A stretch of DNA of 64,000 nt from Macrostomum lignano. Its lineage: Eukaryota. This document shows, piece by piece, positions 22,241 through 53,869 of the stretch (the stretch's first letter is position 1; each line of letters starts with the position of its first letter). The DNA lies in the NCBI GenBank assembly GCA_002269645.1, contig NIVC01001096.1, positions 295,332 to 359,331 on the forward strand, in the 5' to 3' direction. The translations under genes and the position numbers were made by a program. The notes below the pieces were generated by a model that was not told the DNA's origin, ran no database searches, and saw nothing but the letters and a program-made list of their open reading frames with translations.

Positions 22241-25200
22241 TTATAGAAAACCCACAGTCCGTGGCACTGGCTCGTAGAAGGCGTCGGTCTTCTGCCGGGA
22301 TTGCAGAGGCCTCAGAACACGGTCGCTCGGACGGATGACGTGGTCTGCTGCCCTGGAGAGTCGGTCGGCGAGCCGCTTTATCTCCTCTTTCGTCTGGCGG
22401 TTGCGGTCGGCGATGGCCGCTCTTGTCGCGTCGATGGGTTGCGAGTTTTGGAGGCTCGGGATCACATCGTTGATTTGCCTGCCAAATAGCAGACTAGCCG
22501 GTGCGACGCCTGTGGCGCAGTGTGGAGTGCGCCTGTACGCTGCCAGGTATTCGTCCAAGGCCAGCGTCCAGTCCCGACCTTCGAGGACCGCCGCGCGAAT
22601 GGCTTTGTTCAGCCCCTGGTTGCACCGCTCCGTTGCGCCGTTGGCCTGAGGGTAGAGAGGCGTGATTCGATGGTGCCGGGCGCCTGATCCACCAGGAAGC
22701 TGCTGAACTCGGCCGATGCGAAGGGCGGGCCGTTATCCGTAGTTACCTTCGCCGGCTGCCTGAAGATGCTGAACCACCGGCGCAGCACCTTGATGACGGC
22801 GGAGGCGGTGGTGCTGGGCATGACCTCCACGAGCGGGAACCTGGAGAAGTGGTCCGTGCAGACGAGCAGCGACTTGCCGCTTACCGGTCCGAGGAAGTCC
22901 AGCCCCAGCTCGAGCCAGGGGCCCTCCGGTAGTTCGGTCGGCTTGAGCGGCGTGGTTTTCGGCGAGGTCTCGCGGGTGCAGGCCTGGCAGCTGATGCAGG
23001 CTGCCACGTGCGCTTCTACGGATGCTCGCATGCCGGGCCACCAGACCTTCGGTTGTAGGCGGTCCAGCGTTTTTCTGACGCCCTGGTGGGCCAGCTGCAG
23101 GCACCGGTATCGCAGAGCCGTCGGCATGTACAGTTGGCTGCGGCACAGCAGCAGGCCGTCCAGTTCGGACAACTCGTGGGCCACGCCGTGCAGTCCCTGT
23201 AGGCTCGGGTCGCTCTTGTCCCACTGGTTCCCGCGGATGGCGTGCAGAGCTGCTTGGACGGTGTAATCTTGGTCGGAGGCGGCCTTGATGATGGTCAGGC
23301 TGATGGACACCGGGGTGGCCGCCCGCACTGCCGTGGCCAAGTAGATCGCATCCGCCTGCTCGCCGACGTTGTTCGGCGGCATTGGCAGCGGCTGGCGGCT
23401 CAGGACGTCGGAAGGATTGCCGGCTCCGGGCTGGTAAACCACTTGGAAGACCAGGTCTTGCAGTCGCAGCGCCATGCGCTTAATGCGGGGCTACCAGCCG
23501 CAGGGATACCAGCGGCTTGTGGTCGGTGATCACCTTGAAGCTGCCGCCGCCGCTGAGGTAGTGATGAAACTTCAGGCCACCGTACTTCACCGCGAGCGCC
23601 TCCCGCTCCGTCTGGGAGTAGCGCTGCTCGGTCGGGCTCAGGCTGCGGCTCGCGTATGCCACCGGCCGCGTCGATCCGTCAGGTTGGACTTGGGCGAGGA
23701 TGGCGCCGACGCCCGTGGGGCTGGCGTCCACGATTAGCTGGGTCGGAAGCTTGCTGTTGAAGAATGCCAGCGCCTCGCTGCTGGCGATCGTTTGCTTGAT
23801 GTCCTTGAACGCGGCCTCCTGTTGTTCGCCCCCATGTCCACTCGGCGGCCTGCCGGGTCAGCTCTCGGAGCGGCCGGGCCATGTCGGACAGGTTGCTGAT
23901 GAAGCGCGCGAGGAAGGTGACGAGGCCGAGGAACGAGCAGACCTCGGTCGCGTTGGTCGGCCGCTTGAAACTGTTGATGGCCGCCACTTTCTCGGTGCTG
24001 GGGTGAATGCCGACTGCAGATAGCCGCATGGCGAGGAAATCGACCTCTCGCTGAGCGAATCAGCACTTTTTGGGGTTCAGCGTGATGTTGCTGGCCTTCA
24101 GCCGGGCCAGGCAGTCTCGCAGGCTCTGATTGTGCTCTTCAATGTTCTTTGCGTACACTAGGATGTCGTCGTGCACCCAGCGGACGCCGGGCAGGACGCT
24201 GAGGACGGAGGTCATCACCCGCTGGAGGATCTCGGAGGCGGATGTGTAGCCCATGCAGAGCCGGCGCAGCCGCAGGAGCCCGATGGGCGTGGAGAACGTC
24301 AGCAGATCCCTGGACTCCTCGGCGACTTCAATTTGGTGGAACGCTTTGGCGACATCCAGCTCCGAGAAATACGTCGATCCGGCCATTTCGTCAGTTACCT
24401 CTTCGAATGTGGGGATCGGCTGCTTCTCCGGGATGACGTACTTGTTCACCTCGCGGAGGTCCTCCTGGGTGATGCGCACCTCTCCCTGCTCGGCCTTCGG
24501 GACCGAGACCATCCTGGAGCACCAGGCTGTTGGCCCGTGCACTCGCTCGATGATTCCCAGTGCAAGCTGCTCTTCCAGCTCCTTGATGACGGCAGCCCTG
24601 AGGTGCACTGACACTCGGGATGGCGGTTGGCAGACTGGGGTGGCATCTGATCTCAGCTTGATGGTGATGGTGACGCCCTTCGCGCATCTGATGCCCTGAA
24701 AGCGGTTGCTGAAGTCCGCCAGGATGCTCTCAAGCTGCAGCTTCTTGGGCAGGTGCTGATCCTCGCATCTCGCTGGTTTGGCCAGGCTGGCCACCACCGC
24801 CGAGTTTGAGCAGGCCTCTGGGCCGACTCTCAGCATACCGAGCTTCGTGCTGGACGCTCTGCCGAGGATTGGGGTGCAGCTGCTCCGGATGACAATGAAG
24901 TTCGCCTGCAGCTCGCGGTGGTTCGCCCTGACGGTGAGCGTCGTTTGACCGGCTGCCTCCAGCGGCTTGCTGGCGCCGAGCGCGAAGACTCTGGTGCTGG
25001 ACGGCGCAAGTGGCATGCCGCGGCTGCAAATTCTGCGGAACGTCGCCATGTCCAGTACGTTGCAGCTTGCTCCGCTGTCGATCAGTGTGCAAACCTGCTG
25101 ACCGTTGATGCTGTTGGGGAATTTGGCGCTATCGTCCTTGCCGATGAGCGTGCAGAACACCTCGTTGACTGGCTGGTCCGCAGGCTGGTCTTGCTCGGGC

Positions 25201-26214
25201 TGTAGGGCGTTGATCTTCGAGCGGCTGAGGCAGGCCTTGGCCAGGTGGTTGAACTTGCCGCAGTTGGTGCACCGCTTGCCTAGCGCCCTGTTGCAGCTCC
25301 TGTGACCCGACTCGCCGCACCGAATGCACTTCGCGGATGGCTGCGGCTGGCGCGACGGTTTCAGCGGCGGGTGGCGCTGGCGGCGCACCTGCGCCACTTC
25401 CTCGGAGGCTGCCGTTGTCCTGGACATGATGGCCGCCTGCTTCTCTGCTGCCTCGTGCGTCCTGGCCAGTTGGAGGGTGTCCGCCAGGTTGATGTTGGGG
25501 AGGTTCAGCAGCCGCTTTCTCAGCGACTCGCTGCGGCAGCTGGCCACAATTTGGTCCCTGACGAGCGAATAACGTAGGCTCTCGAACTGGCAGGCTTCCG
25601 AGGCGCTCCAGAGTCTGCTGTGCCAGGCGTCTATTGACTCGCCTTCGTCCTGCACGCACTGGCGGAATTGGTAGAGGAGAAACACAATGTTGTCGCGACC
25701 TTGGAAATGCTTGGTGAACAGAGCGATCAGCTGGTCGACCGTGGGTTCGACTGTAGGTTCACCTTCTGTTGTGTCGGTCTCTGTTATTATGATCTTGCTA
25801 TACAGGTCGCTTACTTCTTTGCCTGCCGTGTATAGGAGGATCTGGCGTTTCTGTGTCTCGTTTGTGATGCCCGTGGCCGCCAGGTAGCGCGAAGGTTGGT
25901 TGACCACTAATGCCAGCGCTTACTTGTGGAGTGGGGGTCGTCTCTAATGCTAAAGTTACCTGGGGCCAGCAGTTGTAGGAAGGCCATGGTTCAGCCTTGC
26001 GACACCAATGTAATGACTCAGGAGTCAGGCAGTATTTGTGGCGTGCGAGAAAAAGTTCTTAACCCTCCAAGTAGGGTGGGACAATATTTATATATTTGGA
26101 AGCAATCTGATTGCAATGTGCACAAGAGCCGCATGCCTTACGTACATAAGTTGAGTAGCGACATGTACTTGCTAATACAATGTACAAGCTAGCACTAGCC
26201 AGAGTGGCATTACA
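22241..26214 (-). mobile_element. Decayed Ty3/gypsy LTR retrotransposon (Mag/K02A2.6-like), 3'-truncated
   Basis: Order is gag (ATG 25987; premature stop and frameshift; two CCHC-type knuckles), protease LIDSGA, RT (LDVAKAFHQI, WVHDD), RNaseH (DASPTGVGAIL, YSQTEREAL, TDHKPL), integrase (HQG..WWPGM..C..C, LDF, TDNGPPF). The pol region is split over 4-5 frames. No 3' LTR was found. Confidence 0.95.
26009..26214 (-). repeat. 5' LTR (206 bp) of the gypsy element, followed by a PBS-like TGGTGTCG at ~26000-26007
   Basis: On the minus strand it begins TGTAATG and ends CATTACA (7-bp inverted ends), contains TATATAAA, and is followed 1 nt later by TGG and then the gag ATG. Confidence 0.75.
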
Positions 26215-27528: not shown

Positions 27529-29065
27529 TTTGCTTCTGAGAGAGCCCTATAGAACACGCGTTTTATATTGATGATTATTGCCATGCCTATAAGCTCAAAT
27601 ATTATAGACATCGCCACTGTGCCTATAAGTACTCTGTTATAGTTAAGTTGTATATTTGCCATAATTTATTTGGATCATATATTAGTATATACCAGGTTCA
27701 ATGCTAGAAAAAATGACAAGACCTCATTTGTATACTAGGTTTATATGCCAATACAAAACAATTGCCATTTGACACAATGTATATGCTATGTTATGTATGC
27801 TAGGATATATCCTAATGTATGCTAAAAAATGGTAAGACCCTTATTGTACATTGGGAAATCCTGGCATATATGTTGCCTTCCAAACTATGGCATTTTTGTA
27901 TATTGCTAATAGAGCTAAGGCCTACCTTTATTTGCATGGCATTAAGTTAAATATTTGTCTAATTTGTTTTTTAGAATTAAAATCAACTATTTTTCAGTTG
28001 TATTCTGCTTTCTAGACTAGTACTCATATGTAGATATCATATATGCGCAACCCCCCTGATTTACACTAGCCATGCGACTTACTTTTTGACCAAAAATGCA
28101 ACTTACCTGTGAAAGAAACCCTAATGCAATTTTGGCTAAATGGCAAGAGTAACTATAACTGTCTTATAAGGGCTAAATGCCTCATTATCTAATTAGTACT
28201 ATGTCTGTATTCTTTAGGCTAGGCATTTTTACAACTTACCCCTAGTCCACCACAATTTATGGTGGCCAGATCGGCCAGGGCAGCCAGCGGTTGCGCATGT
28301 ATGTAGATATTATATTTTAATTTTGCATTAACATAAGTCATAATTGTTTACATTTTAGTATTTAATTAATATTAATATACATTTATTATCATCTAATATT
28401 CTATTGAATAGGACTCAATATTTTTTGTTTCTCATTATATTACATTATGACCTCAGCAGTAGGTTAGGTTTTATAGATAAAAAATTATACAAAAAATTAT
28501 GCCAAAAAAATAAAATTTCAAATATAGTAGAAGTAAAAACTAGTTCTTTACCGGTTGACATGCTTTTGTTACAACTGCAGGTCCTAATACATGAAGGAAG
28601 TTTAGACTAAGAGTAACAAACAAAAAGATTTGAGTTTGAGCCTTCAGCTTCACACCTTCCATTGTTTAAATTGTTTACAAAGGATTTTCTGCCTCAGTAT
28701 TTAAACAGTCTTTGAAAAAAATTATTAAAAAGTAAACTGAAGGCGTATTTAATCTAGCCTTAAGCAAAGCCAGAACTTAGCTTAGTTGTTCACGGAGGCT
28801 TAGTTAAGCCTCTTAGGATAGGCCTAGACGGCTAGACCTAGTAGGCCTACTACAATTGTATAAAAATATTAAAAAGGAGCGAAATGAAAGAAGGATTAGG
28901 ATGATCGCAGTAAAAAAATTTCTATAACCTGTAAATTGCTTCTGTAAATTATATTTTCTTCATACACAGTGCAGTTGCTCAATGCTACTCTCCACTTAAT
29001 TAGGTACTTTTACTAAGCAACGTGTCCCCTAAATTTTCTTCGAAACAAAAGCAAAAGCAAGACAT

Positions 29066-32000
29066 GGGTGATTACTCATCGAGAGGTTTTGGAGGTTCTG
29101 AGGTTTTTCAGAGGTTTCATTTCGAACAAATATTTTTGCACAAAAATTTTAATACTGTACAAAAATTGAAATCTTACTGAAATTTATTAATGAATACAAA
29201 TTTTCTTTAGAATATAGCTCGGAGGTTTGGATTCTTTTTAATTTTTCTTCTGATAGGCACGCGCGGAAATTATTTAACTTAGGCAACTATTTTATGCTTA
29301 AGAAAGTGGTTTTTTAAAAACACTGCACGCAACACAACACACTGGTGGGTCGTTCGCAAATTCTAGGAGGAGCAAAAATTTTAACAATTTTCCGAACATT
29401 TACTATTGTTACTGCCATATTCAAAATAATAGGACACTTTTATCTGTGAATAAAGATAATTTTTGGGTTGAACTTTATCATGCAAAAGTGTTTTTAATCA
29501 TCTGGCGGTATTAAGCGATAATTAGCGATGAAAAAATTCAAATTCAATCATTTCACCGATGTTAATTTTTGATACTACAAGATGTCTGTAGCTAAAACAA
29601 GTTGTTGTTGTGTTGAAACCTTGCTATATTACATTTAAAATGAAAGCTTATATAAATTTAATTTAAGAATTTTTTAAAGCTCAATAAACTGCACTGTAAA
29701 TGATTTTATAGACGCTTAACTGGACGCCTAGCATTTCCGGTGGGATAGCCTCTTTGCGTCTCACAAAATGTATTTTTTAGCTGACGTCTAGAATGTGCGC
29801 TTAAAATGATACATTTTGATGCAGATAATTAGAAAAACATGTCTTATTATCTTTTTGTAAAAAATTATTATGAAATAGAGCACTATTGTTGATAAAAATA
29901 ATTAAAAGCAACCATGCATCGCAATTAACTCCTACTTTGAAGCACAAAATAAATATCCTGTAACCACACTAGCATTCTCCATGGAGCACCTTTTGAGCTG
30001 AAATTTTACACAGATATCCAGTAAAGTAAACTGAGCAAATGATTTTTTTTGTTTTTGAAAATACTTCAATTTGGCTATGTATCAGTTAGTTCATTGGACA
30101 TATTTATTATATTTTTATTAAAATCCTTGTAACCAAGCTACAGAGAAACATGTGCAAAACTGGACCTTGAAATTTGACCTGAATGATCAGCAAATGTGTA
30201 TCTCGAAATGATTTTTTTTTGTTTTCATCAAGTCATTCTATGCTAATTTTTTCTGAAGGGAAAGATACCATATATTTAGAGTCAATAGGGGAAGCATTTA
30301 GACTTATTCAATAGTCATTAAAATTGCAACTATATTATTATAATATAGTAATAATATTATACATGTATTATATAGTAATATTAACTTCTAAGATGCCCTT
30401 ATAAATTTAAGTAAAGACAACAGGCCTTAATTAATTAATCAGCATTTTGAAGAAACTGACCTTATACAGATGGGCCCCAAGCTAAGAAATGAATGTAGAG
30501 CTTATTTCGTGTAAGGTATAAAAATCGATTTATTATAATAAATACTCCTAATAAATTGGTTAAGTTAGTTATTTACCTTGAATTATTTTAATTTAATAAT
30601 TAAATATATAAATTTGTTTCACTTCTTACTGCATTTAAATAGAGTACCTCTCTACTATACTATAGAAGTATAGTAAAAGTATGGTAAAAAGGTATAGTAA
30701 AAATTTTCTTTGGTTTAATCCCAGCTTGCCTCAGTTTTTTAGTCTTAATACGAGCTAGATAGTAAGTGTTGATTAATTTGCTCCATCACCTTTTGCCACG
30801 GAAACAGCACATGTCGGACATGCAACACTCTTCCTGATCCCTGGATCCAAGATGACTGCTTCTGCTTCTTCAATGCTTGAAAACTGAGCTCATGGAGCTT
30901 TAGGTTATGCTGTCAGAGTGCTGCTGCCGGTGCTGTGTGTGTATGTGTGTGTCTTCTGTGGGTAGGTTCCCTGTCCCTCAGTTTAGCCACTGTTGTGGGC
31001 TAACTGGAGGAATTGCCGTTGTCGGTGCTGCAGGTGGCACTGCATGGTAGTATTGACGCTGTCAGTGACGCTGGCAAAGGCTTGGACGAAGCTAGGTGCC
31101 GTCATTGTCAGAAGGACATGCGTGTGCTGCTTAGACCAGTGCGCACATTCGACTGGACTCGTATCTGGTGCAGTCTGGTGTATTCACTGAGATTGTGTGG
31201 ATCTGCCTCCTCGCATCACCTCAACCAGGCTCAATTTCTTTTGTAGAATTTTCGTGCGCTGCTTAACTGCATCTTGTGCCTGCTGAGTGATGCCAAGAAT
31301 TGTGCCACACAATAATTTGGCCCATAAACTACTCGTATATTATACATATGTATGCACAGCACACACACACGCAGTTCATTCTTATTAAATGTACTAGTTA
31401 ATGGAATTCTCATCTCATGAGCTCTAGTCTATGGACAAACCTGAAATTACTAGAATATCTAGATAGATCTAAACTTCTTTGAGCAGCGCGCTGCGCTGCG
31501 AGCAAAATACATGTAGATTCCTTAGCGCAACTAATTAATAGTGTAGTACAGTCTACAGCCTGAAGTAGCCTGTGTAAGATGCGGAGGGATGATTTTTGCA
31601 TAGGAAGCCACTACGGTAAGGTTGATGGAACTATGGGGAGGTGAGAGATTCAAAGCGAGGGACGGAAGCCATGCATAGTTCGATCATAAGTTTAATTTTG
31701 CATGAGTCTGGGGATGCATTAACGAGAGGCGGACGAGAGCATAGAAATAAAGCGGGCTAAATATATTAATACACAAAATTACATGTACTAGCTAGTAATT
31801 TCAGAATGGTCAGCGACTCCTCCGATTTGTATCCGCGACCGCGTGCCCACAAATCCCCCGGCAGACCCTGTCGCAGTTGGTGGTTGTGCACAGAATACAA
31901 TGTTAATTTTCGAGCTTCTCTGCAAAAAATGCGTGATGCACTCAAGATGCGTGCTATAGTCTACTTCTTTGATTAGATGGCTGGGTTTTGCCTTTTCGCT

Positions 32001-35000
32001 TGTGATCATCAAAAGCGTGGGCGTCATTGCTACTGGTGTTTCAGTGTGCGCATTATGTCTGGTTATCATATTATGTGCATGTGCAGTGTCTTTTACCTAC
32101 ATTTTTGTTTGTCTCTGTTTCCTGCATGCTCTTTCGCATTTTTACACCTCGCACATCCTCATTTTTCTCAATTAACAAGTGAAATCTTTTCTTAAAGACT
32201 AATTGCTATTTTAGTTAAGCTAGTAGGTTTTTGGTAATTAAATAATTCAATTTTGTCTATTTTCCAAAAAGTTTCAAAAAATGAATTAATTAAAATAAAT
32301 TTGAATTATTTTAAGTTAATTGGAGTAAAATGTCTAATAAGTAACTATAATTTTTTATTTTAAGTACATGTAGCTTTGGTATAAGTATTAATGTAATAAG
32401 TACTTAAAGTAAAATCAAGCAAGTTATAGTTTTCAGAAATTATGCTACAAATAATCAAATATATACTAGTATCCGAATTCCTTTATTAAGGAACATGCAG
32501 TCGATATTAAATCCACAATGTGCTTTTTGGTGTTCAAGGATAGTTCCCTGACTTTTTCTATTATTAGTTAGATTTTATTATATTTAATGTAAAAATAAAA
32601 ACAATTCTATTCACCATAAAAATGAACATTCTTTATTTGTCGAATCATCTTAACTTTGAAAAGATACATAGTGAAAACTTGATTTTTAATTCAACCTTTC
32701 AAGACTTATTTAGACTTCTTAATTCAGTGATTAGTTAAACTGATCGAAGTCCTTTCGAGTGCATGCTATAATAATTTCGCACTTTTTCGCACACGATAAT
32801 TTTAAATGTCTGGGATTTAGAGCAGAGTAACAAAATGCTGTGCTCAAAAACATTTCCTTTGTCAATTTCTTGTTCTTTTATTTTTGCAAAAGAAATTTAA
32901 CTGCATATTTAAAGTAAAAATAGAAGAAAATTTTATTTTCTCTTTAATATTTTTGTCGTTTATTTTCCGCAACAAAGAATAACAAATAGCCTTGATTTCT
33001 TGTCAATTTCAAGTTTTCTTGTGGTTTTAGTAGCAGCTTCTTACAGAAATTGTCAAAAGAATTTTTTTGTACGATTATTGGTCGATGTATAAACTTTTTT
33101 TGCAATAACAAAAAGTTGTGACCTAGCTTTGAGAACGACCCTGGTAATGTCATCGTTGCCATTGGCATTTACATTCAAGGTGCAAAAACAAAATAAAAAA
33201 TATTCGACTTAAAGGCGCTGCTTGAAATATACTGAAAACATATAGACAGCTGTTTCATCCATTTCCTGTTTTTACTTTTGAGTGCTGCATACCATTTTGC
33301 ATTCGAATTATGTAATGACATTGACGACCTGCATGCATACTGCCTCAGAGAAGTAAATAGAAGAATTATTCTTGTCTCAATGTTTTTTATAAATATATGA
33401 TGGCCTAGAATTACAAGTATGCATTTTTATTACTTAAAGCAGAGCATTTAACTTTTAATCATAAAATTTATTTTAATTACTAAAAGCTATTAGCTTTTCT
33501 CTCAAAAAATAACACTAGTTGCACAACTGCTACTGCTGACAAAAGCTCTAACACCTTAGATTTAGTTCTTATACAAACAAAATGCTTGCAGTAAGACTTT
33601 GTACATGTATTGTATTGCACCACCTTTGTTTGATGCTAAAAATATATGTTGAGCAATAAGCTAGATAGCCGATACCAATATTTTTACTAGAATTAAAACT
33701 AAAAAGTCATTGGACACATTTTTGACATTGTTTATTTAAAAATATCATAATTTCTTCAATATAAATGTATTATTGGCATCTTTAAAGATTGCAAGAACAA
33801 ATGTATAGGAAAATCATTATGTTTATTGACTTTTGAAATTGATTGTTTATGAAAAGTTATAGATAAAAGTAATCATAATCAATGCCTTTTATTTCAACAT
33901 ACTTTGTTTCAGCTGCCAATACCATGCCTGAACTACCGCTTGCCTGGTCTCCTGCCTGCATTCTGAGCCTGTACAGGCCAACAATGCTTCATGTTTGTCT
34001 AATCTAATAACAGGCATTATGGCATTCCATGTCCTATACCCACTTATGTTGCGTCTTAGTGCAACCTAGCTCGCCACCCTTAGAGCTTTGGCAGGCTGGT
34101 TGCTTTTGTGGTGGCAATTGGTTTGGTTGTCAGCATACAGAAGATGGCTGTGCTCTAGCTACTAACCAGATGACATCAACCGACAGCCTAGGGGCTAATC
34201 TACTGCGCACTGCCTTCGAGATGAGTGACTGAAGTTCTTCAACTGCTTGCTGGCTGACGCGCTACAGCCTTCGTTTTTGCAGGCATCGTCTTTAATATGC
34301 GCATTAACTCCTAAAGTTAAGAACTTCACTTTCATCTGAGTAAATAACAAGAAAAGACTTATATTCTCTCATGTAAAGATCTGAAATGTGAACTTTTAAA
34401 CTGTTTTGATTTGACTCTCAAAGAATATTTATAATATAGCGTATTTAGGTAATGTAACAGCAATGTATAGATAAATATACATACTGATAGAGAAAATACA
34501 AAACGTTCCTTCTTTGTTTTTGAAATGCATTCTTGCAATGTTCGATGTTTTAAAAATGTAAAGCCTAAAAAATAAGGCAAGACCAATTGGCAACTACTGT
34601 GAAGCTCGTTTGCTTGTATCAAGTTGGCGTTCGCTGGCTGACATTGGGTTATCTATCAGACTTGGAGTCTCGCCGCACTAAACCCTTGAAAAAACATTAG
34701 CCAGCCTTTTGAGATGCAGCATAGCATTCCAGGTTCAATGACATGTCTATGAAGATGCATCCTACATCGTCAAGACCACCGAGGTGATCGAGACCTCAAT
34801 ATTGTAGGGTGAGGAACATGGGCGATGCTTCTCCAGTGCGCAGTTTCCGCTACGGCCAGCAAAGTGCAATTGGGCAGTCGCATTATGTCAGTTGTAGTGA
34901 GTTCCATTTGGATCAGCACTCGGCTGCTGCTGCTGTTGGACAAAAATGCTTGGTGTGAGTTCCCTTGACACAATTCCCGCAGGGCAATCAGGTGGGCTGC

Positions 35001-36808
35001 AAATTCCTCTCCAAGATTGGCACCAGCATGCCTGACATTGGTTTTCATGGCCTCCAATTGAGACTATCGAACCAGTTGATGCTGGAAGCCCAAAAATGCG
35101 ACAATGGGACTCGAGTGCTGCAATGATGAGCAACAACGCTGAAGTCGAGCTGCACCAAAATGTCCTGTAATGGGTAATAGTGAAATGAGGAATTTTATCT
35201 GTCTAATCATTGGAATGAACTTCCCTGAAAGGTCATGCCATAATTTTTGCTGAAAATCGCGCCATTAGGAATTTAGGGACACTAGCCATGTAACATGTAT
35301 GAATGTCATCTCTTGCCCCAACCATTGGCCTTTGCTTTCAGCTACCCTTGATCCTCATAACATGTATATTGGAAAGACAGCATTTAGAAAATTTACTCAC
35401 TTGTTGCAGTCAAATGTAGTGAAGACCTTGGGGTGTCAAGAAAGACACTTGGTGGATTAATTTAATCGACTTCTAGAAGCATATCATCTTGTGCAAAGGT
35501 ATTTTAGTAGGTCATTGCTTTGCACAAATTCCCATAGTTTGATGGGCTCTGGAAAGATGGCATGATTGATAAAGGAATACAATGTTAGTCTTACATTTTA
35601 GTATATGGATGTAGTGTAAGTACTTAACATCATAAGAAAATCTAAAGATTTATAACCTTCTCCCCAACATGGTTGGCACCATGCATTTCATTGGCATGAC
35701 AACTACTGTGGATGATAAGAGAGTATATTGGTTTAATATTAAAAAAATTCACTTATAAAGTTAATTAAAAACTGAATAAAAATGTGATAACTAGGCATAC
35801 ATAAGTACAAGCTACTATTTACTTTGAATATTTGCATAAAAAGACAAAAACCAAAGCAAGTTACTAATGTATAAGAGTAATAGAAATTGTACTCACCCAT
35901 ATCAACTTAAATTATAACTGAATATAAATAGCTATTAATAAATTATAATTAAAATTAAAAAGTAAAAATTTCAGTTCATTAGAGCTTTCAAATTTATACA
36001 TAGAGGTAGAGCAATCAAATAAAAAATTGCCATTTTTAAAGCCTGGTGAAGAGAATTATTCACTAGGATTAGAGACTTAGTCTTAGGTAATAAATATTTT
36101 TATCCTGTGCATAGTGTGTTAGGATTTAGGATGATGATGTAAAAATAGTAAAATAATATAAAATAAAAATAATTTTTTAGTAAATTGGATATAAAATAAA
36201 AAAAGAATATCAAATAAGTGAAATAAAAATAATATATTTTACATTAAATATGCCTAGTAAAATACTTAGGGCCTTTAGTTAGTTAGACTAACAATCTATA
36301 TTAAATAGCGACTGATACTGATTTGATGAAAAAAATACTGACTTGGTCTTGTTAGTGTTAGTCATAATTTAAGTCTGGCTTAAAAATTGATAGCTTTCTT
36401 AAGACCAAGTAAAAAACAATATGAAATTCGCATTGGTAAATAGTGTCTGTATTTAATTACATGGACAGGTCTAGTAGAAATTAGGATAGTTACGAATATG
36501 CATTGAAAGGGAACAACACACACTTGTGACGATTCGCAACTTTGCGCTTATGAAATGAAATGTCATGGAAGTCCCTACCACTTCGCACAAAAACAGTTAA
36601 ATAATTTTCGCGCGTGCCTATCAGAAGCAAAATTAAAAAGAATCCGAAACCTCCGAGCTATATTCTAAAGAAAATTTGTATTCATTAGTAAATTACAGTA
36701 AGATTTTAATTTTTGTACAGTATTAAAATTTTTGTGCAAAAATATTTGTTCAAAATGAAACCTCTGAAAAACCTCAAAACCTCCGAAACCTCTCGATGAG
36801 AATCACCC
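29066..36808. mobile_element. Mutator-like (MULE-type) DNA transposon, 7743 bp, no intact transposase seen
   Basis: ~214-bp TIRs (29066-29279 and 36595-36808, about 10 differences) starting GGGTGATT; identical 9-bp flanks GCAAGACAT at 29057-29065 and 36809-36817. Confidence 0.88.
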
Positions 36809-37999
36809 GCAAGACATCGCTTCAAGGCTTGCTCGCCAAAATTAACAAACTCTAATGAAACTACAAAGTAGTTACGTACTAATTGGTACTACTGATGAAA
36901 AAAAAATTTAAACATTTTTAATGAAAAGTGTTAAATTATAAAATTACTTATTATTTCTCAGATTTGACTTCCGACAATGAAGCATTAAGCCTCTTCGCAT
37001 TACCAATTCCAGAACAAGAATCGGTTCGAATATCCCAAGAAAAACAGCATTATAACTATTTAACTCTGTTAATATTTGACTGCCTTTACAGCCTCACTTT
37101 GCACAACTTTTCACTTTCTTCTTGGCGATTTTCATTCAATAATTAAGAGTTTATAGCAAGTATAAGCCCACTAGTTAAGGAGACAAAGTTATCCTTTACA
37201 AATTGGTTCTGGTTCTAGAACCAGAACAAGGAATATGAAGAGCCTCATTGTAAACTCCAGTACTTTGGCTTACGTCAGAAACTACTGCAGCTGAACTCTA
37301 GGTTTCTGTTGAAAGCGCTACTATAGCTCGTTAAACTATATTTAACCGAGTTCAGCACCACTTACTGGTATGGTCCGGCTTAATGTCTGCAACAAATTGG
37401 CAACAAAATCTAGCTTTACTGTCTAGAGAGTTGCATTAGACCGCAACTATTGGAAGCAGTTAATATGGTTTCTCAAGTGGATTGAAAAAAATTCTGAATT
37501 AGTCAACATGATAATATAAGTCTATAATAATTATGATTATTTGCATGACGGCTGCAACCCTGCAAACAAAAATACTATGCTTGCTATTTTAGTGTACGTG
37601 GTATTCTATACTGGTGGGACTACTCATTTGCAAATTTAATATGCAGGTTGGCAGGTATCTCAAAATTTATTGACTTTGCTTGAGTCGAGCTGGATTAAGT
37701 TTGGATTGTCACACTGGCGATCATGAAGTTGCTTCTTAGAGAAACTGCAGACTAGCGCAGCATGTAGAGTATGATTTGAAATAATTAAATGAAAACAAAG
37801 TTCGCAAGCAATAAAAATCTTTTATTCCATGCTTCTGTGCTTCCACGGATGCCAAGCCGTAAACGCCATGTTTAATATATTTGGATCTAACGCTTTATTA
37901 TATGGCTATGAATCCAACCAACGTAAAACAGCGCATTCGCGAATATGAAGGTAAGTTGAATATTCAATAATTATAGTTAGCATGTACTATTAGCATCGG

Positions 38000-38206
38000 T
38001 CAACGCAACCGACGCGCCTCCCGCTCAGACTCTAACAGAGTGAGAATATCGCCCTCGCGTACTGGGCCCTTCACGTTGCGAATAATCGATCTACTGCTCT
38101 CGTCGAGAAATTCAACGCGAACCTGGGTGCACTGGCCTTGGGATCCGGTTCGGCCAACCACCTTGGTGACGCGGGCAAGACGGGGCTGTCCGGTTTTTGA
38201 GTCCAT
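38000..38206 (-). CDS. RPS28: 40S ribosomal protein S28 (68 aa)
   Basis: [68 protein letters not shown] at 38206; the track start at 38260 is an upstream non-ATG codon. Confidence 0.98.
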
Positions 38207-38217
38207 TGTTATTTGAG

Positions 38218-39551: not shown

Positions 39552-42500
39552 TTAAGCCTTCAGCGCTTGTTTCTTCTGTTGCAGCTTAGCTTTCTTATTC
39601 TTGTTCTTATTCTTCTTTTTGTTATTAGTAGTAGCTGGCTGTGACTGCTGCTTAGGGGCGGCAGGAGCGGCAGGCTGATTAGATGGTTTCTTTGGCAGAG
39701 ACGGCTGCTGCTCCGGCTTCTGTTTTACGCCAGCAACGTCGCCATTGGCATCGGCGGCCAATTTTCGCTGTTTCCTCTCGGCGGCCAGCTGATTCTTATA
39801 GCTGGCCGATCGGCCAAACGCTACGCGCAGCTTGCAGCCTCGCACAGCGGCACCCTGGGCGGATTTCAAAGCTTTCAAAGCGTCGGCAGGCTGTGCGTAT
39901 TCAGCGAACGCGTAGCCAGCCGTTGACTTGTCGCGCAGGGTTGGCACTTTAACACTAGTCGCGTTCGGGAACAGAGCGGCCAACTCCTCTTTAGTGGCGT
40001 CTTTGGCAACATTAGTAATAAATAGTTGGCGCGTATTCAAAGTGGCCACATCAACGCTGCCAGTTTGTGCCATTTTGGCTACCAATTCAGACCCGTTGAA
40101 CATTTTGCCATTGAGCATATTCACCCATTTGGCGGCCGTGGTCGAGTCTTTGTATTGAAGGAAAGCGTAGCTCCGATTTTCCGATTTATTCTTTGGATTG
40201 CAAGGAATTCGAGAGGATACAGTCTCTTTAGATAGCTCTTTTAGCATAGCCTGGGTGCAGCCCTTCGGAATCGGGGTGATGAACACAGTGCAGTTAAGCG
40301 ACTCAGTCATTAGACGCTTGATTTCTTCTACAACATCCGGCGGTCCCGGGTCCGACTCGGCGACGACAGAAGTGGCTGGTTGCTTTTTCTGCTTGTTGGC
40401 GGCTTGAGTAGAAGCTTCTTCGGCTGGACGCTTCTGGCCGCGCTGCTGTTCTTGCTGTTGTTGCTTTTGCTGCTGCTGCTGCTTGGCAGAAGCGTCAGTC
40501 TTTGCTAGCTTAGCAGGTGGCGCAGCCTCTTCTTCTTCATCGTCGTCGTCCTCGTCTTCATCATCGTCATCATCATCTTCTTCGCTGTCGCTCTCAGCTG
40601 GACGCTTCATGCGCGACAAAGCTAGCGGCTCCAGCTTCTGTTGACCTTTCTTTTGGACCGGGAGGGCAGCTGGCTCTTCTTCGTCGTCGTCTTCATCATC
40701 TTCCTCATCGTCCGAGGAGCCTGCGTCGGCCAGCAGCTTGGCAATGGATTCTTCGTTGACATCCTCGTCTAGTTCGTCGTCATCTAGATCCTCTTCGTCT
40801 TCGTCTTCTTCTTCCTCCTCGTCGTCGTCGTCTTCATCATCATCGTCGTCCAAATCGTCGTCTTCGTCGCTGTCCTCTTCCAGCTTTCGCTTGGCCTGCG
40901 GGCGAGAAAAAATATTATCACTTTTTTTTAAAATGGGATGAATACAACCAGAAATGCATCGAAAAATTGTAAGAGCAGAACTCACCGGCAGTTTGACAAG
41001 CTGTCCAGCAGGTGATTTATTACTGCCAGCTGTTCCTGCGGCTGCAGCGGTGGCGGGCGACTTAGCAGCGGTAGCAACGGCGGTAGCTGGCGACTTAGCT
41101 GAAGCGGCAATAGCCGGTTTCTTTGAAGGCGGCGGAGCTTCTTCGTCATCGTCATCGTCGTCTTCTTCATCATCCTCATCGTCTTCGTCGGAGCCGGCAG
41201 CGGCTAGCATCTTCTCGATCTTGTCCATGTCCATCTCCTCTTCATCGTCATCATCGTCGTCTTCCTCTTCGTCATCATCCAAATCTTCGTCGTCATCATC
41301 ATCGTCTTCCTGTTCGACCTTCTTCGCAGCCGGTTTCGCCGCGGCGGCTGGCTGGAATAAAATAGGGATTAAACTACTGAGATTGTGAGATGGGGAATAA
41401 GCTTCTGACATTGTGAGATGAGGAATAAGCTACTGACATTGTGAGATGGGGAATAAGCTACTGAGATTGTGAGATGGGGAATAAGCTACTGAGATTGTGA
41501 GATGGGGAATAAGCTACTGACACTGTGAGATGGGGAATAAGCTTCTGACACTGTGAGATGGGGAATAAGCTACTGACATTGTGAGATGGGGAATAAGCTT
41601 CTGACACTGTGAGATGGGGAATAAGCTACTGAGATTGTGAGATGGGGAATAAGCTTCTGACACTGTGAGATGGGGAATAAGCTACTGACATTGTGAGATG
41701 GGGAATAAGCTTCTGACACTGTGAGATGGGGAATAAGCTACTGACATTGTGAGATGGGGAATAAGCTTCTGACACTGTGAGATGGGGAATAAGCTACTGA
41801 CATTGTGAGATGGGAAATAAGCTTCTGACACTGTGAGATGGGGAATAAGCTTCTGACACTGTGAGATGGGGAATAAGCTACTGACACTGTGAGATGGGGA
41901 ATAAGCTACTGACATTGTGAGATGGGGAATAAGCTACTGACACTGTGAGATGGGGAATAAGCTACTGAGATTGTGAGATGGGGAATAAGCTTCTGACATT
42001 GTGAGATGGGGAATAAGCTACTGAGATTGTGAGATGGGGAATAAGCTACTGAGATTGTGAGATGGGGAATAAGCTACTGACATTGTGAGATGGGAAATAA
42101 GCTTCTGACACTGTGAGATGGGGAATAAGCTTCTGACACTGTGAGATGGGGAATAAGCTACTGACACTGTGAGATGGGGAATAAGCTACTGACATTGTGA
42201 GATGGGGAATAAGCTACTGACACTGTGAGATGGGGAATAAGCTACTGAGATTGTGAGATGGGGAATAAGCTTCTGACATTGTGAGATGGGGAATAAGCTA
42301 CTGAGATTGTGAGATGGGGAATAAGCTACTGAGATTGTGAGATGGGGAATAAGCTACTGACATTGTGAGATGGGGAATAAGCTTCTGACACTGTGAGATG
42401 GGGAATAAGCTTCTGACACTGTGAGATGGGGAATAAGCTACTGACACTGTGAGATGGGGAATAAGCTACTGACATTGTGAGATGGGGAATAAGCTACTGA

Positions 42501-45500
42501 GATTGTGAGATGGGGAATAAGCTTCTGACATTGTGAGATGGGGAATAAGCTACTGAGATTGTGAGATGGGGAATAAGCTACTGAGATTGTGAGATGGGGA
42601 ATAAGCTTCTGACATTGTGAGATGGGAAATAAGCTTCTGACACTGTGAGATGGGGAATAAGCTTCTGACACTGTGAGATGGGGAATAAGCTACTGAGATT
42701 GTGAGATGGGGAATAAGCTACTGACATTGTGAGATGGGGAATAAGCTACTGACACTGTGAGATGGGGATTAAGCTACTGACACTGTGAGATGGGGAATAA
42801 GCTACTGACACTGTGAGATGGGGAATAAGCTACTGACACTGTGAGATAGGGAATAAGCTACTGACACTGTGAGATGGTGAATAAGCTACTGACACTGTGA
42901 GATGGGGAATAAGCTACTGACATTGTGAGATGGGGATTAAACTACTGACATTGTGAGATGGGGAATAAGCTACTGACAAAGACTAAATGACGTGGACAAA
43001 ACCTTAAATACTGCCAATGTACGCAAATGTCGAGTGAACGAGACAAAATCTACTAAGCGCTAAAAGAAAGGCAAAGTTGAAACTCTCGTTCTAGTTTAAA
43101 GACACGACGAACTGCGTTGATGGACAATACTTTGCGCCGCTACGAAAACCGACGCGTTAACTGATTTTTTTAAATGAACGGACGGTGAGCAATGAGCGGC
43201 ATTTGGTTTAGTTTCTTTTAACAGACTCAATAGGATTCTTAGGGGCTGTAGCCACGTGGTCTAGCGCGGCGCTCTGATGTGCAAGAGGCCCAGGCTTGAT
43301 TCCAAGTGCAGTCACATTAATTTGGGGCTAAATTAGATTCTCGTAAGGCACAGTGATGCCGAACGATAAATAAAGTTAGGGGAGTTGTGTACACTCCTGT
43401 GTGAGTGTGTGCCTGGGCATTTGACTGTGTTCGTATTCGCGCGCTTATGCGCCTGCTCAGGGGAGTTGGCGAAATGGGCAGTATTGCCTCTCGCCGGTTG
43501 TATGACAATGTCGCTTAAAGTGCACACAGCCCCCTGCCTCTAATAATAAAAAACGGGCTCGTAAAACTACTTGTAGTAATCTAAATATACTAAAAATGAA
43601 AATCTTATTCACTAAAAATAAAGTAGGACGAAATGCAAAATGAAAAAAACTGAATTAAAAAGACCCAGATTGAACTACTTACTAAGTAACAAGCAGAGCT
43701 GATATTAGACAATGAATTAAAACACTTACAGATTTTCCTGCCGGAGATTTGGCAGCCGAAGCAGGAGCAGTCTGCTTCTGCTGTTTCTGCAGCTGCTTGA
43801 GCTTGCCCATCAGTTCCGGACTCAAATCGTCATCATCCTCGTCTTCGTCATCGTCATCTTCGTCTCCGCCTTCTTCATCGTCGCCGCTGCTAAACTCCAA
43901 TTCGCTGTCGTCTTCTCCTTCCATGCCTTCTTCGTCCTCGTCCTCGTCTTCCTCGTCATCATCGTCATCGCCACCAGACGATGGCTTTTTCTGTTGCGGC
44001 CTGTTGCCACCCTGTTAGGTGATTAAATAAAGCAGGTGATATTTGAACACATTTTCTGGCGTGTAGAAACAGCAGACATTGCAGATTCGAAATCTATCTA
44101 CGACAGGGGTTGGCAAACTCAGGCCCGCTGGCTACTCCCTCTGGCCCCTCTGGCCATTCAAAGTTGTGAATGGTCCCACTGGCCATTTAGAGTTGTGAAT
44201 GGTCCCTCTGGCCATTTAGAGTTGTGAATGGTCCCTCTGGCCATTCAAGAGTTGTGAATGGTCCCTCTGGCCATTTAGAGTTGTGAATGGTCCCTCTGGC
44301 CATTTAGTTGTGAATGGTCCCTCTGGCCATTCAGAGTTGTGAATGGTCCCTCTGGCCATTCAGAGTTGTGAATGGTCCCTCTGGCCATTCAGAGTTGTGA
44401 ATGGTCCCTCTGGCCATTCAGAGTTGTGAATGGTCCCTCTGGCCATTCAGAGTTGTGAATGGTCCCTCTGGCCATCCCTATCTCTACTGCCCGCAGTCAT
44501 ACACTAGATTCTCTATCTAATTGAGGTAAAAAAATTTGCCGACCCCTGATCCAAGAGAACATAAGGGAAGATCTTAAGACATTTATTAAAAAACTGACAG
44601 AGTTAAGATCTAACGTCTAGTGAACCTAGACCAAGAATGATCCCAGAGTCACTTGCGTCGCCCTACAATTGCTGCCTGTAACACAGGGAAAAATAGGAAA
44701 GAAGTGACTCTAAACCGACTTTAAACCGACGAGATATCACGATAAAAGTCGCCTAAAAGTCAATTTGAGGCACTTTATTGTCTGCGACTCTGTGGCCGTA
44801 CAGTCGGTCTCTGGGGCGTGCTAGTGTTGCTGTAAAGTTACTCAGCCCACCTGCGTCATCTTGTAGAACTAAGAATCGCATTTAGCATTTATAAAAACTC
44901 TATCTAGTCTACTAGAGTTAGTAGACAGTTAAGCACCAACACAACGACTCTTGGATGACTCTTCTACGATTCTATAACTCACGTGATTACGTGAAAGTCA
45001 CAAGAGTCGCTATAGTCACTAATTGGTTGTTTGCAGTAATTCTTTTACCGGTTCAAAATTGATCCAAAAATAATATCTGATTTGTAGTTGTAGAACATTA
45101 TTAATTGTTCATATAATTATCTGCGCACCTGAAATCCACCACCGCGCTTAAAAGCACTGGCGCTGCCACGATTGCCGTTGAAGACGCCGCCTCTTCTAGC
45201 AACCTGCTGCTTGCCGTCGCCAGCTTTAACGCCTTTGAACGGCTGAATCTGGGCGAATGGCTTTTTGTCGCCGGGCGTGGCCGGACTGCGGGATTGATCC
45301 TTTTGAAAGTAGCGACCGCCGCCACCGCCGCCGCCGCGGTTGCCGGGGCTGCCACGACCGCCGCGGTTGCCGGGGCTGCCACGACCGCCGCGGTTGCCGG
45401 GGCTGCCACGACCGCCGCGGTGTCCCGGGCTTGAACTGAATCGGCCGCCGCCGCCACCTCGGTTTCCGCCCCTGCCACCGCCCCCTCTGTTTCCGCCTCT

Positions 45501-51867: not shown

Positions 51868-53869
51868 TCGGTGCAGCTGGGCGACAGGCCATAATGGCTG
51901 AAAGTGTTGTGGTAAGAGTACAGATGCAAGAAAATACATGAAATTAATATAACGAAGTAAAGTAGAATTATGAAATAATATAACAAAGTAAACTAGAACT
52001 ATGCCAATTATTGATTTTTGCTTTTTAAAAAAGTTGCAGTAGCCTACACAATGCAAACAAATTTTTATATAGGAATAGTTTTGGTGCATGGCACAAGCAA
52101 ACTTTTTTGATAAGAATTGTTTTAGTATATAATATATGAATATGGTACAATCAAACTTTTTTGATAGGATTCATTCTAGCACAGGCATACTATGATCTTG
52201 ACTATGGCCACTGAATAGTCATTTTGATTTTGTCTATTATAGTAATATAAAAGGGGCACATGATATATAACTCTCTAAGCTACTTGACAACTGTACTAGG
52301 CCCTATGCACAAACTATAATAGCTCAAGAATTAACCAATTGCTTGAATTATTAAAAGTTGACAAGCTTATGCAGTACAGATACCAACATACATGCGCAAC
52401 AGTCAGCCGAGTCAGCCGATCCAGCTGACTGATTTGGCAGCCAACCAAGGAAGTCGCAAAAATTCCATCCCGAAAAAATAACCAAGAAGTAGTACTAAGT
52501 AGCTGACAAGGCATGTTGGCTTAATAAGGCAGTCATAGTTACTCCTGCCGTTTACCCAAAGTTGCGTTAATTTTGCTTCAGGGTTTTTTTACATGTAAGT
52601 CGCATTTTTGGCCAAAAACTATGTCACATTTTTGTTAAAACTAAATCGCATGGCCGACCGAATTTTGGAGGTTGCGCATGAATGAATACCAACTAAACTG
52701 TACAGTGAGTGTACCAATTTATATAATTCTAGGCCTAGGCTACACTATGTCTGTTTTTAAGTAGATTAGAGTCTAGACCTATATCATTGACAAAAAAGTT
52801 AAATTCAAAGTGAAGTCTTGAATAAATGTTAGTCCTAGGCCTAAAGCTTAGATGAACTATGCTATGGATATAGCATATTATGGATATATGGATATGGACT
52901 ATGGTTATGATAACAGTGCCACTGCGGCACTGCCACTATTATTGGATAAGTTGTTTTATGACAAAGTCTAATTGTCTAACCAACTAGATACAAATTGCAT
53001 AGTCATAAGATAGTAAGAAAAAAATTAATTTAACTAAAACAACGGGAAAATCTTAACTTCTGGCAGCGCACTAACTTGCTTGCAACCGTTAGAAGCAGCA
53101 ACATGTGAATGCCTGCTGATCATGCGCCATGTGCGAGCCGTAAGTTGCGAAGAGTGAATTTTAAAACTGTTCAAAGTCACTATTGTTTGTGCATTTAAAA
53201 TCGAAGCAGTTAAACACCCATGCCTAGTAGATACCAAAGGTAGCCATAATTCTTGCAGTGCAAGCATAAAATAATATTTTTTGTTTCTATTGCTAAATAA
53301 TAAGCATCAGTAGACTCAAATAAAGCACATACTTAACGTTTTTGCAGCATCAGTAGGTGGTTTTCACAATGGGCAACGAAATGCAGCGGCAAAAAATCCC
53401 ATGTGCTAAACTGAGTATCAGCAGTCACAATTCTTAATTGTTCGCATGCTTCGAGTCTTTTTTGTTTTCCTACATGTACACTATAATATCAATAACTAGA
53501 ATTTAATCTAATCGTTGCCTAAGGCTAGCTTGCACACACGTCTTTCATAACTCACCGTTTGCTTTCGTTGATAGTTAAAAGGGTATGACTTTCCCCTTAA
53601 GTCTTCGGTCGTTAGTTGATGCTTTTTAATAGCGGTCAGTAGAGGTCAGTTTTATATATCCTCATGGACTTTTTTTGTTACATATGTAGATGACAATTAA
53701 CTATAAAAATGAAAACTCTGTCTATGGCCAAGATCCATTGCAAATCTTCTTACCTAAAAGGAGATGGAACAGAAGATTAGGAAGAGCAACAGGGGAGAGT
53801 CCAGAGACAAGAAAAAAGAAAATAAAGAAAATAAAAGTCCAGGGAGAGGCGAGAAAAGATATACATGTA

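What the first reader, a model, noticed from the sequence alone, without database searches (positions are those of the whole stretch)
29057..36817. Hidden 7.7-kb Mutator-like element: 214-bp TIRs and a perfect 9-bp TSD around decayed cargo
Seen: the apparently featureless AT-rich region is bounded by ~95%-identical inverted repeats and the exact duplication GCAAGACAT. Known: long TIRs with a 9-bp TSD are the Mutator/MULE hallmark, and gene-fragment-carrying Pack-MULEs are best known from plants. Inside are several stop-ridden, coding-like minus-strand segments (~30.8-31.3, 31.8-32.2, 33.0-33.2, 33.9-34.3, 34.6-35.6 kb), some with splice-like boundaries. The TIRs look well preserved while the interior looks old. 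Inference: a non-autonomous, Pack-MULE-like element in an animal, mobilised in trans.
Basis: partly seen in the sequence, partly recalled or inferred. Interest (0 to 1): 0.8.

Follow-up and report, generated by a model that had tools for sequence, protein, structure and literature searches.

The report
Non-autonomous DNA transposon in a flatworm
This is a real 7.7-kb cut-and-paste transposon copy in the flatworm Macrostomum lignano that inserted after the recent genome duplication, but it encodes no transposase and shows no captured genes, so it is an ordinary non-autonomous element, probably Mutator-like.

Summary
The structural observation holds. There are 214-bp terminal inverted repeats (29066-29279 and 36595-36808, 95.3% identical) flanked by an exact 9-bp duplication, GCAAGACAT.

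The window is Macrostomum lignano contig NIVC01001096.1:295332-359331. Two homeologous contigs of the same assembly carry the target 9-mer once and lack the element. The insertion lies in the RPS28 / ELAPOR1-like spacer, about 395 bp upstream of the ELAPOR1-like gene. It is younger than the roughly 2.3% split between the two closest copies.

The element is non-autonomous. No Pfam domain appears in any of six frames, and a positive control worked. The GC-richer "coding-like" islands have no protein homologue. Their open frames are no longer than those in composition-matched shuffles. The Pack-MULE / gene-fragment cargo idea is therefore not supported.

The 9-bp duplication, long repeats and 5'-GGG tips fit Mutator best. 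They also fit Merlin (8-9 bp duplication, 5'-GG tips, repeats of 24-462 bp). I could not reach an autonomous partner or another copy, so the superfamily stays unproven.

Each repeat carries five GAGGTT motifs, which are candidate transposase-binding sites. One homeolog has a different GGGT-tipped element inserted 3 bp away, which hints at a hot spot.

The parts
29057..29065 (.). Left target-site duplication, GCAAGACAT
   Evidence: Exact 9/9 match to 36809-36817. Present once in the homeologous loci L005 (14022-14030, reverse complement) and L007 (one substitution).
29066..29279 (+). Left terminal inverted repeat, 214 bp, tip 5'-GGGTGATTACTCATCGAGAGG
   Evidence: 95.3% identical to the reverse complement of 36595-36808, E 2e-93.
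29083..29116 (+). Cluster of four GAGGTT(T) subrepeats, 8-11 bp apart, near the TIR tip. A fifth copy lies at 29222-29227. These are candidate transposase-binding sites.
   Evidence: Five copies per TIR in the same orientation and none in the 7.3-kb interior. The window has 22 copies on both strands, 10 of them in the two TIRs. Shuffle P<5e-5. The binding function is inferred.
29280..36594 (.). Interior, 7,315 bp, AT-rich, with no detectable coding capacity, internal repeats or RNA genes
   Evidence: Six-frame Pfam scan empty at E<=1 apart from one chance-level hit, Sensor_TM1 at E 0.44, far below its cut-off, with a positive control. No direct repeats. No Rfam or tRNA hit. No similarity to the rest of the window, L005 or L007.
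30700..32200 (.). GC-richer island 1 (GC 0.39-0.52).
   Evidence: Composition. ORF lengths equal those of shuffles. No protein homologue.
33850..34350 (.). GC-richer island 2
34600..35500 (.). GC-richer island 3. It holds the 97-aa and 104-aa open frames on the minus strand.
   Evidence: The 97-aa frame (34773-35063, minus) had 0 hits in a full HMMER scan of 1.84 billion representatives.
36595..36808 (-). Right terminal inverted repeat, 214 bp
36759..36792 (-). GAGGTT(T) subrepeat cluster of the right TIR. A fifth copy lies at 36648-36653.
36809..36817 (.). Right target-site duplication, GCAAGACAT
   Evidence: with the empty sites.
28341..28662 (-). Context: 5' end of the ELAPOR1-like gene. 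The annotated gene start is at 28662, about 395 bp from the element.
   Evidence: Gene table of L008, which is the window itself, and of L005. Alignment. ELAPOR1 Pfam domains on downstream exons.
38000..38215 (-). Context: ribosomal protein S28 gene, ending 1.18 kb from the element
   Evidence: PF01200.

Best explanation
The feature is a 7,743-bp non-autonomous class II (cut-and-paste, DDE-type) transposon.

Shown:
- It integrated into the spacer between RPS28 and an ELAPOR1-like gene in one of the three homeologous genome copies of Macrostomum lignano.
- Integration duplicated the 9-bp target GCAAGACAT.
- It happened after that copy diverged from its closest homeolog.
- The element encodes no transposase.

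Inferred:
- A transposase made elsewhere in the genome recognised the 214-bp terminal inverted repeats and moved the element. The five GAGGTT(T) subrepeats in each repeat are the likely binding sites.
- The 9-bp duplication, long repeats and 5'-GGG tips make a Mutator-superfamily (MULE/Phantom-type) enzyme the most likely partner.
- The interior is non-coding DNA of unknown origin: either a long-decayed remnant of an autonomous ancestor or acquired non-genic sequence. It is not recognisable gene fragments.
For: - TIR and TSD anatomy.
- Organism and locus: 99% protein match to M. lignano BOX15_Mlig031596g1. The window is 100% identical to NIVC01001096.1.
- Precise empty sites in homeologs L005 and L007, with flanks collinear across the junction.
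- Timing: the window differs from L007 by 2.0-2.4% in substitutions and from L005 by 3.3-7.1%. This matches the published S/L1/L2 subgenome divergences of 1.9-2.4% (PMC10733133).
- Non-autonomy: six-frame Pfam scan empty apart from one chance-level hit (Sensor_TM1, E 0.44), with no transposase family. The same procedure finds RVT_1 at E 9.5e-23 in the neighbouring Gypsy element.
- No protein homologue for any stop-free stretch of at least 30 aa in the islands, nor for the best ORF in a full HMMER scan.
- GAGGTT motif enrichment confined to the TIRs.
- Literature: MULEs have 8-11 bp TSDs and TIRs often hundreds of bp long, and occur in Platyhelminthes with 9-bp TSDs (PMC6446971). The animal Mutator/Phantom family Tm1 has non-autonomous members, 9-bp TSDs and TIR pairs about 93% identical (PMC3169594).
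Against: - No autonomous element sharing these TIRs was found.
- No second copy of the family was found in the roughly 110 kb of M. lignano DNA I could read, so membership of a repeated family is not shown.
- Merlin elements have the same structural diagnostics: TIRs of 24-462 bp, 5'-GG termini, 8-9 bp TSDs (PMC8101967). They also occur in flatworms.
- The TIR pair differs at about 3.8% of aligned sites plus two indels. This is slightly more than the 2.3% expected if the repeats were identical at an insertion younger than the window/L007 split, so either they were already unequal or the dating is loose.
- The binding-site role of GAGGTT is inference only.
Confidence: 0.6

Rival explanations
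1. Same anatomy and mechanism, but the element belongs to the Merlin (IS1016-like) superfamily and was mobilised by a Merlin transposase.
For: Merlin is defined by TIRs of 24-462 bp with a conserved terminal 5'-GG and 8- or 9-bp TSDs (PMC8101967). The element has 5'-GGG tips, 214-bp TIRs and a 9-bp TSD. Merlin occurs in flatworms such as Schmidtea and Schistosoma, which are mentioned in the same paper.
Against: In the families described in that paper, 8 bp is the commoner Merlin TSD and most TIRs are 23-40 bp. By contrast, 9 bp with TIRs of hundreds of bp is the modal Mutator pattern. No DDE_Tnp_IS1595 remnant is present in the element.
Confidence: 0.22
2. One reading: a Pack-MULE-like element whose interior is made of captured, now decayed, host gene fragments on the minus strand.
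For: GC-richer, exon-like islands lie in an AT-rich interior at the stated coordinates. The local codon-usage score reaches values seen in real genes at 30.9-31.2 kb.
Against: - No hit at E<=0.1 for any stop-free island translation against 5.8 billion proteins, a set that includes the M. lignano proteome.
- No hits in a full HMMER scan for the best ORF.
- No Pfam domain.
- ORF lengths are indistinguishable from shuffles.
- The codon score is positive on both strands, so it reflects GC content.
- No similarity to the three homeologous loci or the rest of the window.
Confidence: 0.06
3. The element is an internally decayed former autonomous copy. On this reading the interior is the remnant of a transposase gene with introns, mutated beyond recognition.
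For: Its 7.7-kb size is typical of autonomous animal MULEs with introns. The GC-richer islands are spaced like exons.
Against: The insertion is younger than a roughly 2.3% divergence. A gene intact at insertion should therefore still be easily recognisable, yet nothing is detected. The copy was therefore already non-coding when it moved.
Confidence: 0.1
4. It is not a transposon at all, but an assembly artefact or a local inverted duplication that happens to be flanked by a 9-bp repeat.
For: None specific. Mlig_3_7 is known to contain chimeric scaffolds (PMC10733133).
Against: The repeats end exactly at the duplicated 9-mer. Two independent homeologous contigs show the uninterrupted target with base-pair precision.
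Confidence: 0.01

Closest known systems
Non-autonomous Mutator-like elements of animals, e.g. the Tm1 Mutator/Phantom family of root-knot nematodes (PMC3169594) and the MuDR1_SM / Curupira MULEs of flatworms (PMC6446971)
   Same: 9-bp TSD. Long TIRs containing short subrepeats. TIR pairs a few percent diverged. Non-coding members mobilised in trans. Paralogous empty sites. Host is an invertebrate, and some of these families are from Platyhelminthes.
   Different: No transposase-encoding relative with these TIRs has been identified. The TIR sequence matches nothing I could search. At 7.7 kb it is much larger than typical MITE-like members. Most of the TIR is unique sequence rather than tandem subrepeats.
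Pack-MULEs of plants
   Same: MULE-like ends and TSD, no transposase, and a large interior of non-transposon sequence. The insertion is close to the 5' end of a gene.
   Different: The defining feature, recognisable host gene fragments inside, was tested and not found.
Merlin / IS1016 superfamily
   Same: 5'-GG termini, an 8-9 bp TSD, a TIR length within the reported 24-462 bp range, and presence in flatworms.
   Different: 9 bp and TIRs over 200 bp are the less common state for Merlin. No IS1595-type DDE remnant is present.

Membership tests
Mutator / MULE superfamily | Target-site duplication of 8-11 bp, typically 9 | tested here: met
   Exact 9-bp TSD, delimited by an empty site.
Mutator / MULE superfamily | Terminal inverted repeats, often 100 bp or longer | tested here: met
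   214 bp, 95.3% identical.
Mutator / MULE superfamily | MURA-type DDE transposase (Pfam MULE / Transposase_mut, often with SWIM or FLYWCH) in the element or in an element with the same TIRs | tested here: not met
   No such domain in six frames of this copy (control). This is expected for a non-autonomous copy. An autonomous partner elsewhere in the genome could not be searched.
Mutator / MULE superfamily | TIR sequence shared with a known or autonomous MULE family | not testable with these tools
   No M. lignano genome, Repbase or Dfam search was available. The terminal 20-mer gave only chance hits in metagenome, prokaryote and viral collections.
Pack-MULE | Interior carries fragments of host genes, recognisable by homology | tested here: not met
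Merlin / IS1016 superfamily | 8- or 9-bp TSD, 5'-GG termini, TIR of 24-462 bp (PMC8101967) | tested here: met
   9-bp TSD, GGG tips, 214-bp TIR.
Merlin / IS1016 superfamily | DDE_Tnp_IS1595 transposase in the element or in an autonomous partner | tested here: not met
   Absent from this copy. A partner could not be searched.
hAT / P / other 8-bp-TSD superfamilies | 8-bp (or 7-8 bp) TSD | tested here: not met
   The TSD is exactly 9 bp and cannot be shortened or extended, given the empty site.
Foldback-type elements | TIRs built largely of tandem subrepeats | tested here: inconclusive
   Four GAGGTT(T) repeats lie within 35 bp of the tip and one lies further in. The other roughly 170 bp of each TIR is unique sequence.

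The most novel reading that the evidence does not exclude
The window's element and the unrelated GGGT-tipped element in homeolog L007 have overlapping ~9-bp target sites, offset by 3 bp. Both lie about 400 bp upstream of the same ELAPOR1-like gene, and both inserted after the recent genome duplication. This could mean that M. lignano harbours recently or currently active Mutator-like transposases with strongly targeted, promoter-proximal integration. That would parallel the 5'-gene preference of maize Mu. Such enzymes would help drive the large indels that differentiate the three subgenomes, and could serve as an endogenous transposon tool in this transgenic model.
Probability: 0.2. Interest if true: 0.5.

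Novelty: new member of a known kind. Interest (0 to 1): 0.3.

Why it matters
DNA transposons of Macrostomum lignano are essentially undescribed. Literature searches found work only on its LTR retrotransposons and on piggyBac used as a vector.

This copy is a cleanly delimited, post-duplication insertion with an internal control, the empty homeologs. It therefore documents that a TIR family with a 9-bp target-site duplication was mobile during the neopolyploid phase of this genome. It is a concrete example of the large indels reported to make up most of the divergence between the three subgenomes (PMC10733133).

The practical value is modest. It offers a seed sequence for finding the family and its transposase. 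It may also affect the promoter of one ELAPOR1-like homeolog. It is not a new kind of element, and the most exciting part of the original claim, gene capture in an animal MULE, is not supported.

Tried and rejected
- **Pfam scan.** I scanned all six X-masked frames of 29057-36817. The only hit was Sensor_TM1 at E 0.44, which is noise.
- **Protein search of the islands.** A chimeric query of every stop-free stretch of at least 30 aa from the three GC-richer islands, both strands, against 5.8 billion proteins gave nothing at E<=0.1.
- **Full HMMER scan.** I ran the single best ORF instead and got 0 hits.
- **TIR tip in public collections.** The terminal 20-mer found four loci in the metagenome and prokaryote collections and none in the viral one. 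All four are chance 20-21-mers with no extension.
- **Sampling the genome through Gypsy copies.** The window's Gypsy RT has no near-identical annotated copy in the protein database (best 41-54% identity), so this route failed.
- **Exact-product look-ups.** The 619-aa RRM ORF and the 68-aa RPS28 were not on record. The 71-aa RPS28 model worked.
- **Subterminal repeats inside the TIRs.** Local alignments scored no better than shuffles.
- **Internal repeats and RNA genes.** No internal direct repeats, Rfam families or tRNAs.
- **MULE transposase query from the literature.** I considered building an external query from the Dupeyron et al. supplement to fish out M. lignano MULEs.
- **TIR divergence as a clock.** Rejected, because the TIRs of one DNA transposon need not be identical at insertion.
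Full report
**Observation**

The region is bounded by inverted repeats at 29066-29279 and 36595-36808. They match over 214/215 nt at 95.3% identity, with eight substitutions and two 1-nt indels (blastn E 2e-93). Directly outside the repeat tips lies the exact 9-mer GCAAGACAT, at 29057-29065 and 36809-36817. On the + strand of the 64-kb window this 9-mer occurs only at those two places. The neighbouring bases differ, so the duplication is exactly 9 bp. No other copy of the repeat exists in the window.

**Organism and locus**

The window is eukaryotic. It has dense 20-30 bp minisatellites, a Gypsy-type gag-pol, a LITAF gene, an ELAPOR1-like gene, RPS28, an acidic RRM protein and a TTL-like gene.
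- The C-terminal part of the RRM ORF is 99% identical to Macrostomum lignano BOX15_Mlig031596g1.
- Looking up the 71-aa RPS28 product returned two contigs of assembly GCA_002269645.1 (Mlig_3_7). One of them, L008, is 100% identical to the window over 20,216 bp.
- Together, this places the window at NIVC01001096.1:295332-359331 and the element at 324388-332148 of that record.
- The element occupies 7,761 bp of the 9.3-kb spacer between RPS28 (stop at 38000, minus strand) and the annotated start of the ELAPOR1-like gene (28662, minus strand). It sits about 395 bp upstream of that gene.

**Empty sites**

M. lignano is a neopolyploid whose assembly holds three homeologous copies of most loci. These are S, L1 and L2, with SNP divergence of 1.9-2.4% and most differences being large indels (PMC10733133). 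I recovered the two other copies of this locus: L005 (NIVC01001974.1) and L007 (NIVC01000732.1).
- In L005 the alignment to the window jumps from 36809 to 29065, and the 9 bases ATGTCTTGC (reverse complement of GCAAGACAT) are present once.
- The window with the element and one duplicate removed aligns straight across the junction, matching 706 of 767 columns.
- L007 likewise has the 9-mer once, with one substitution, and none of the element.
- Substitution divergence is 2.0-2.4% between window and L007, and 3.3-7.1% between either of them and L005.
- The window and L007 are therefore sister copies, and the insertion post-dates their split.

**Coding capacity**
- All six frames of 29057-36817, with stops masked, were scanned against Pfam-A at E<=1. 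No transposase or other family was found.
- The same procedure applied to the neighbouring Gypsy region recovers RVT_1 at E 9.5e-23, so the negative result is meaningful.
- Every stop-free translation of at least 30 aa from these islands, on both strands, was searched as one query against 5.8 billion proteins. That set contains M. lignano proteins. Nothing scored at E<=0.1.
- The best single ORF (97 aa, 34773-35063, minus strand) had no hit in a full HMMER scan of 1.84 billion cluster representatives.
- The longest open frames in the islands (102-104 codons) are what block-wise dinucleotide shuffles give (P about 0.5). Three real exons of the window exceeded every shuffle.
- A codon-usage scan scores both strands positively at the islands, which is a GC effect.
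- The interior has no internal repeats, Rfam families or tRNAs. It has no similarity to the rest of the window or to the homeologs.
- The element is therefore non-autonomous. The idea of decayed gene-fragment cargo has no support. What the interior is derived from remains unknown.

**The ends**

Each repeat starts 5'-GGGTGATT(A)CTCATCGAGAGG. Each contains the hexamer GAGGTT five times in one orientation, at positions 18, 27, 35, 46 and 157 from the tip. The hexamer is absent from the 7.3-kb interior. Ten of its 22 occurrences in the window (both strands) are in the two repeats, and the shuffle P is below 5e-5. Short phased subterminal repeats of this kind are the usual transposase-binding sites of cut-and-paste elements. 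That role is inferred here, not shown.

**Mechanism**

The most likely history runs as follows. A transposase encoded elsewhere bound the repeats, excised a copy and integrated it with a 9-bp staggered cut into the promoter-proximal spacer of one homeolog. The steps that are shown are the insertion, the 9-bp duplication, the absence of a transposase gene, and the timing relative to the homeolog split. The steps that are inferred are trans-mobilisation, the binding sites and the identity of the enzyme.

**Superfamily**
- A 9-bp duplication with repeats hundreds of bp long is the modal Mutator pattern. MULEs with 9-bp duplications are known from flatworms (PMC6446971).
- The nematode Tm1 family shows that animal Mutator/Phantom families include non-coding members with 9-bp duplications, composite repeats and about 93% identity between the two ends (PMC3169594).
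- Merlin elements are defined by the same kind of features: repeats of 24-462 bp, terminal 5'-GG, and 8- or 9-bp duplications (PMC8101967).
- Membership of either superfamily ultimately rests on the transposase, or on sharing ends with an autonomous element, and I could not test that.
- The M. lignano genome is not searchable by DNA with these tools. The terminal 20-mer gave only chance matches in the public collections. TE proteins of this species are barely annotated. No second copy occurs in the roughly 110 kb of M. lignano DNA I could read.
- I put Mutator at about 0.6, Merlin at about 0.2, and the rest on other or unclassified.

**Dating caveat**

The two repeats differ by about 3.8% in substitutions. 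That is slightly more than expected if they were identical at an insertion younger than the 2.3% window/L007 split. The counts are small, and the ends of one DNA transposon need not be identical at insertion (Tm1 pairs average 93%). I therefore do not use repeat divergence as a clock.

**Second element at the same spot**

In L007 a different ORF-less TIR element of 4.95 kb sits 3 bp away from the window element's target.
- It spans L007 11410-16353, and its ends start GGGTCTCCCTAAAACACGC.
- It is flanked by CCTTGCTTT / TCATTGCTTT. This looks like a decayed 9-bp duplication of TCTTGCTTT, which overlaps the window's target ATGTCTTGC by 6 bp.
- Nested in it is a perfect 197-nt inverted-repeat pair with tips GGGTGCGTTCGAG.
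- Two independent insertions within 3 bp in a roughly 1.6-kb spacer would be expected by chance about 0.4% of the time. This estimate is post hoc. It hints at a promoter-proximal hot spot and at a set of GGGT-tipped families with 9-bp duplications active after the genome duplication.

**Verdict**

The structure is real and precisely delimited. There is no evidence for Pack-MULE-type gene capture, and the Mutator label is probable but unproven. It is a new member of a known kind, of modest interest.

Noticed in passing
L007:11410-16353 (NIVC01000732.1, homeolog of window 29057-36817): A different 4.95-kb ORF-less TIR element is inserted 3 bp from the window element's target site. Its tips start GGGTCTCCCTAAAACACGC, and it has a decayed ~9-bp TSD (CCTTGCTTT / TCATTGCTTT). 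The two target sites overlap by 6 bp, so this may be an insertion hot spot about 400 bp upstream of the ELAPOR1-like gene.
   Followed up: partly
L007:11654-11850 and 15965-16161: A perfect (100%) 197-nt inverted-repeat pair with tips GGGTGCGTTCGAG is nested in the L007 element. A further 186-nt, 95% inverted pair lies at 11841-12026 / 13021-13206. This is a foldback-like architecture. The flanks match only 7/9, so a TSD is not clear.
   Followed up: partly
window 22612-25904 (minus strand): A Gypsy-type LTR retrotransposon (RVT_1, integrase, protease) lies in the first intron of the ELAPOR1-like gene. It is shared with homeolog L007 but not aligned in L005. The best database relatives of its RT are only 41-54% identical.
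   Followed up: partly
L007:3524-7108: A non-LTR retrotransposon with an intact 1,194-aa ORF interrupts the RRM / nucleolin-like gene in this homeolog. From the sequence it looks like endonuclease plus RT plus C-terminal zinc fingers, but I did not scan it against Pfam. It is absent from the window and from L005.
   Followed up: no
window 82-21053, 41365-44475, 56997-61483 (many arrays): There is an extraordinary density of 20-30 bp minisatellite arrays, several longer than 1 kb (for example 10386-11985, 14172-15575 and 41365-42978). Most lie in introns of the ELAPOR1-like and RRM genes. Array lengths differ between homeologs.
   Followed up: no
window 52384-52685 and 28038-28303; L005:3267-3427; L007:1064-1363 and 17204-17376: A short dispersed repeat of about 160-300 bp has at least five copies (70-90% identical) in roughly 110 kb. 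It may be a MITE or SINE family. It was not characterised.
   Followed up: no
window 38000-38215 versus L005:12690-12905: The RPS28 homeologs differ by one residue (EFLDESS versus EFIDESS). The annotated gene models start at a non-ATG codon (QITMDSK...), so the deposited CDS is 5'-partial.
   Followed up: no
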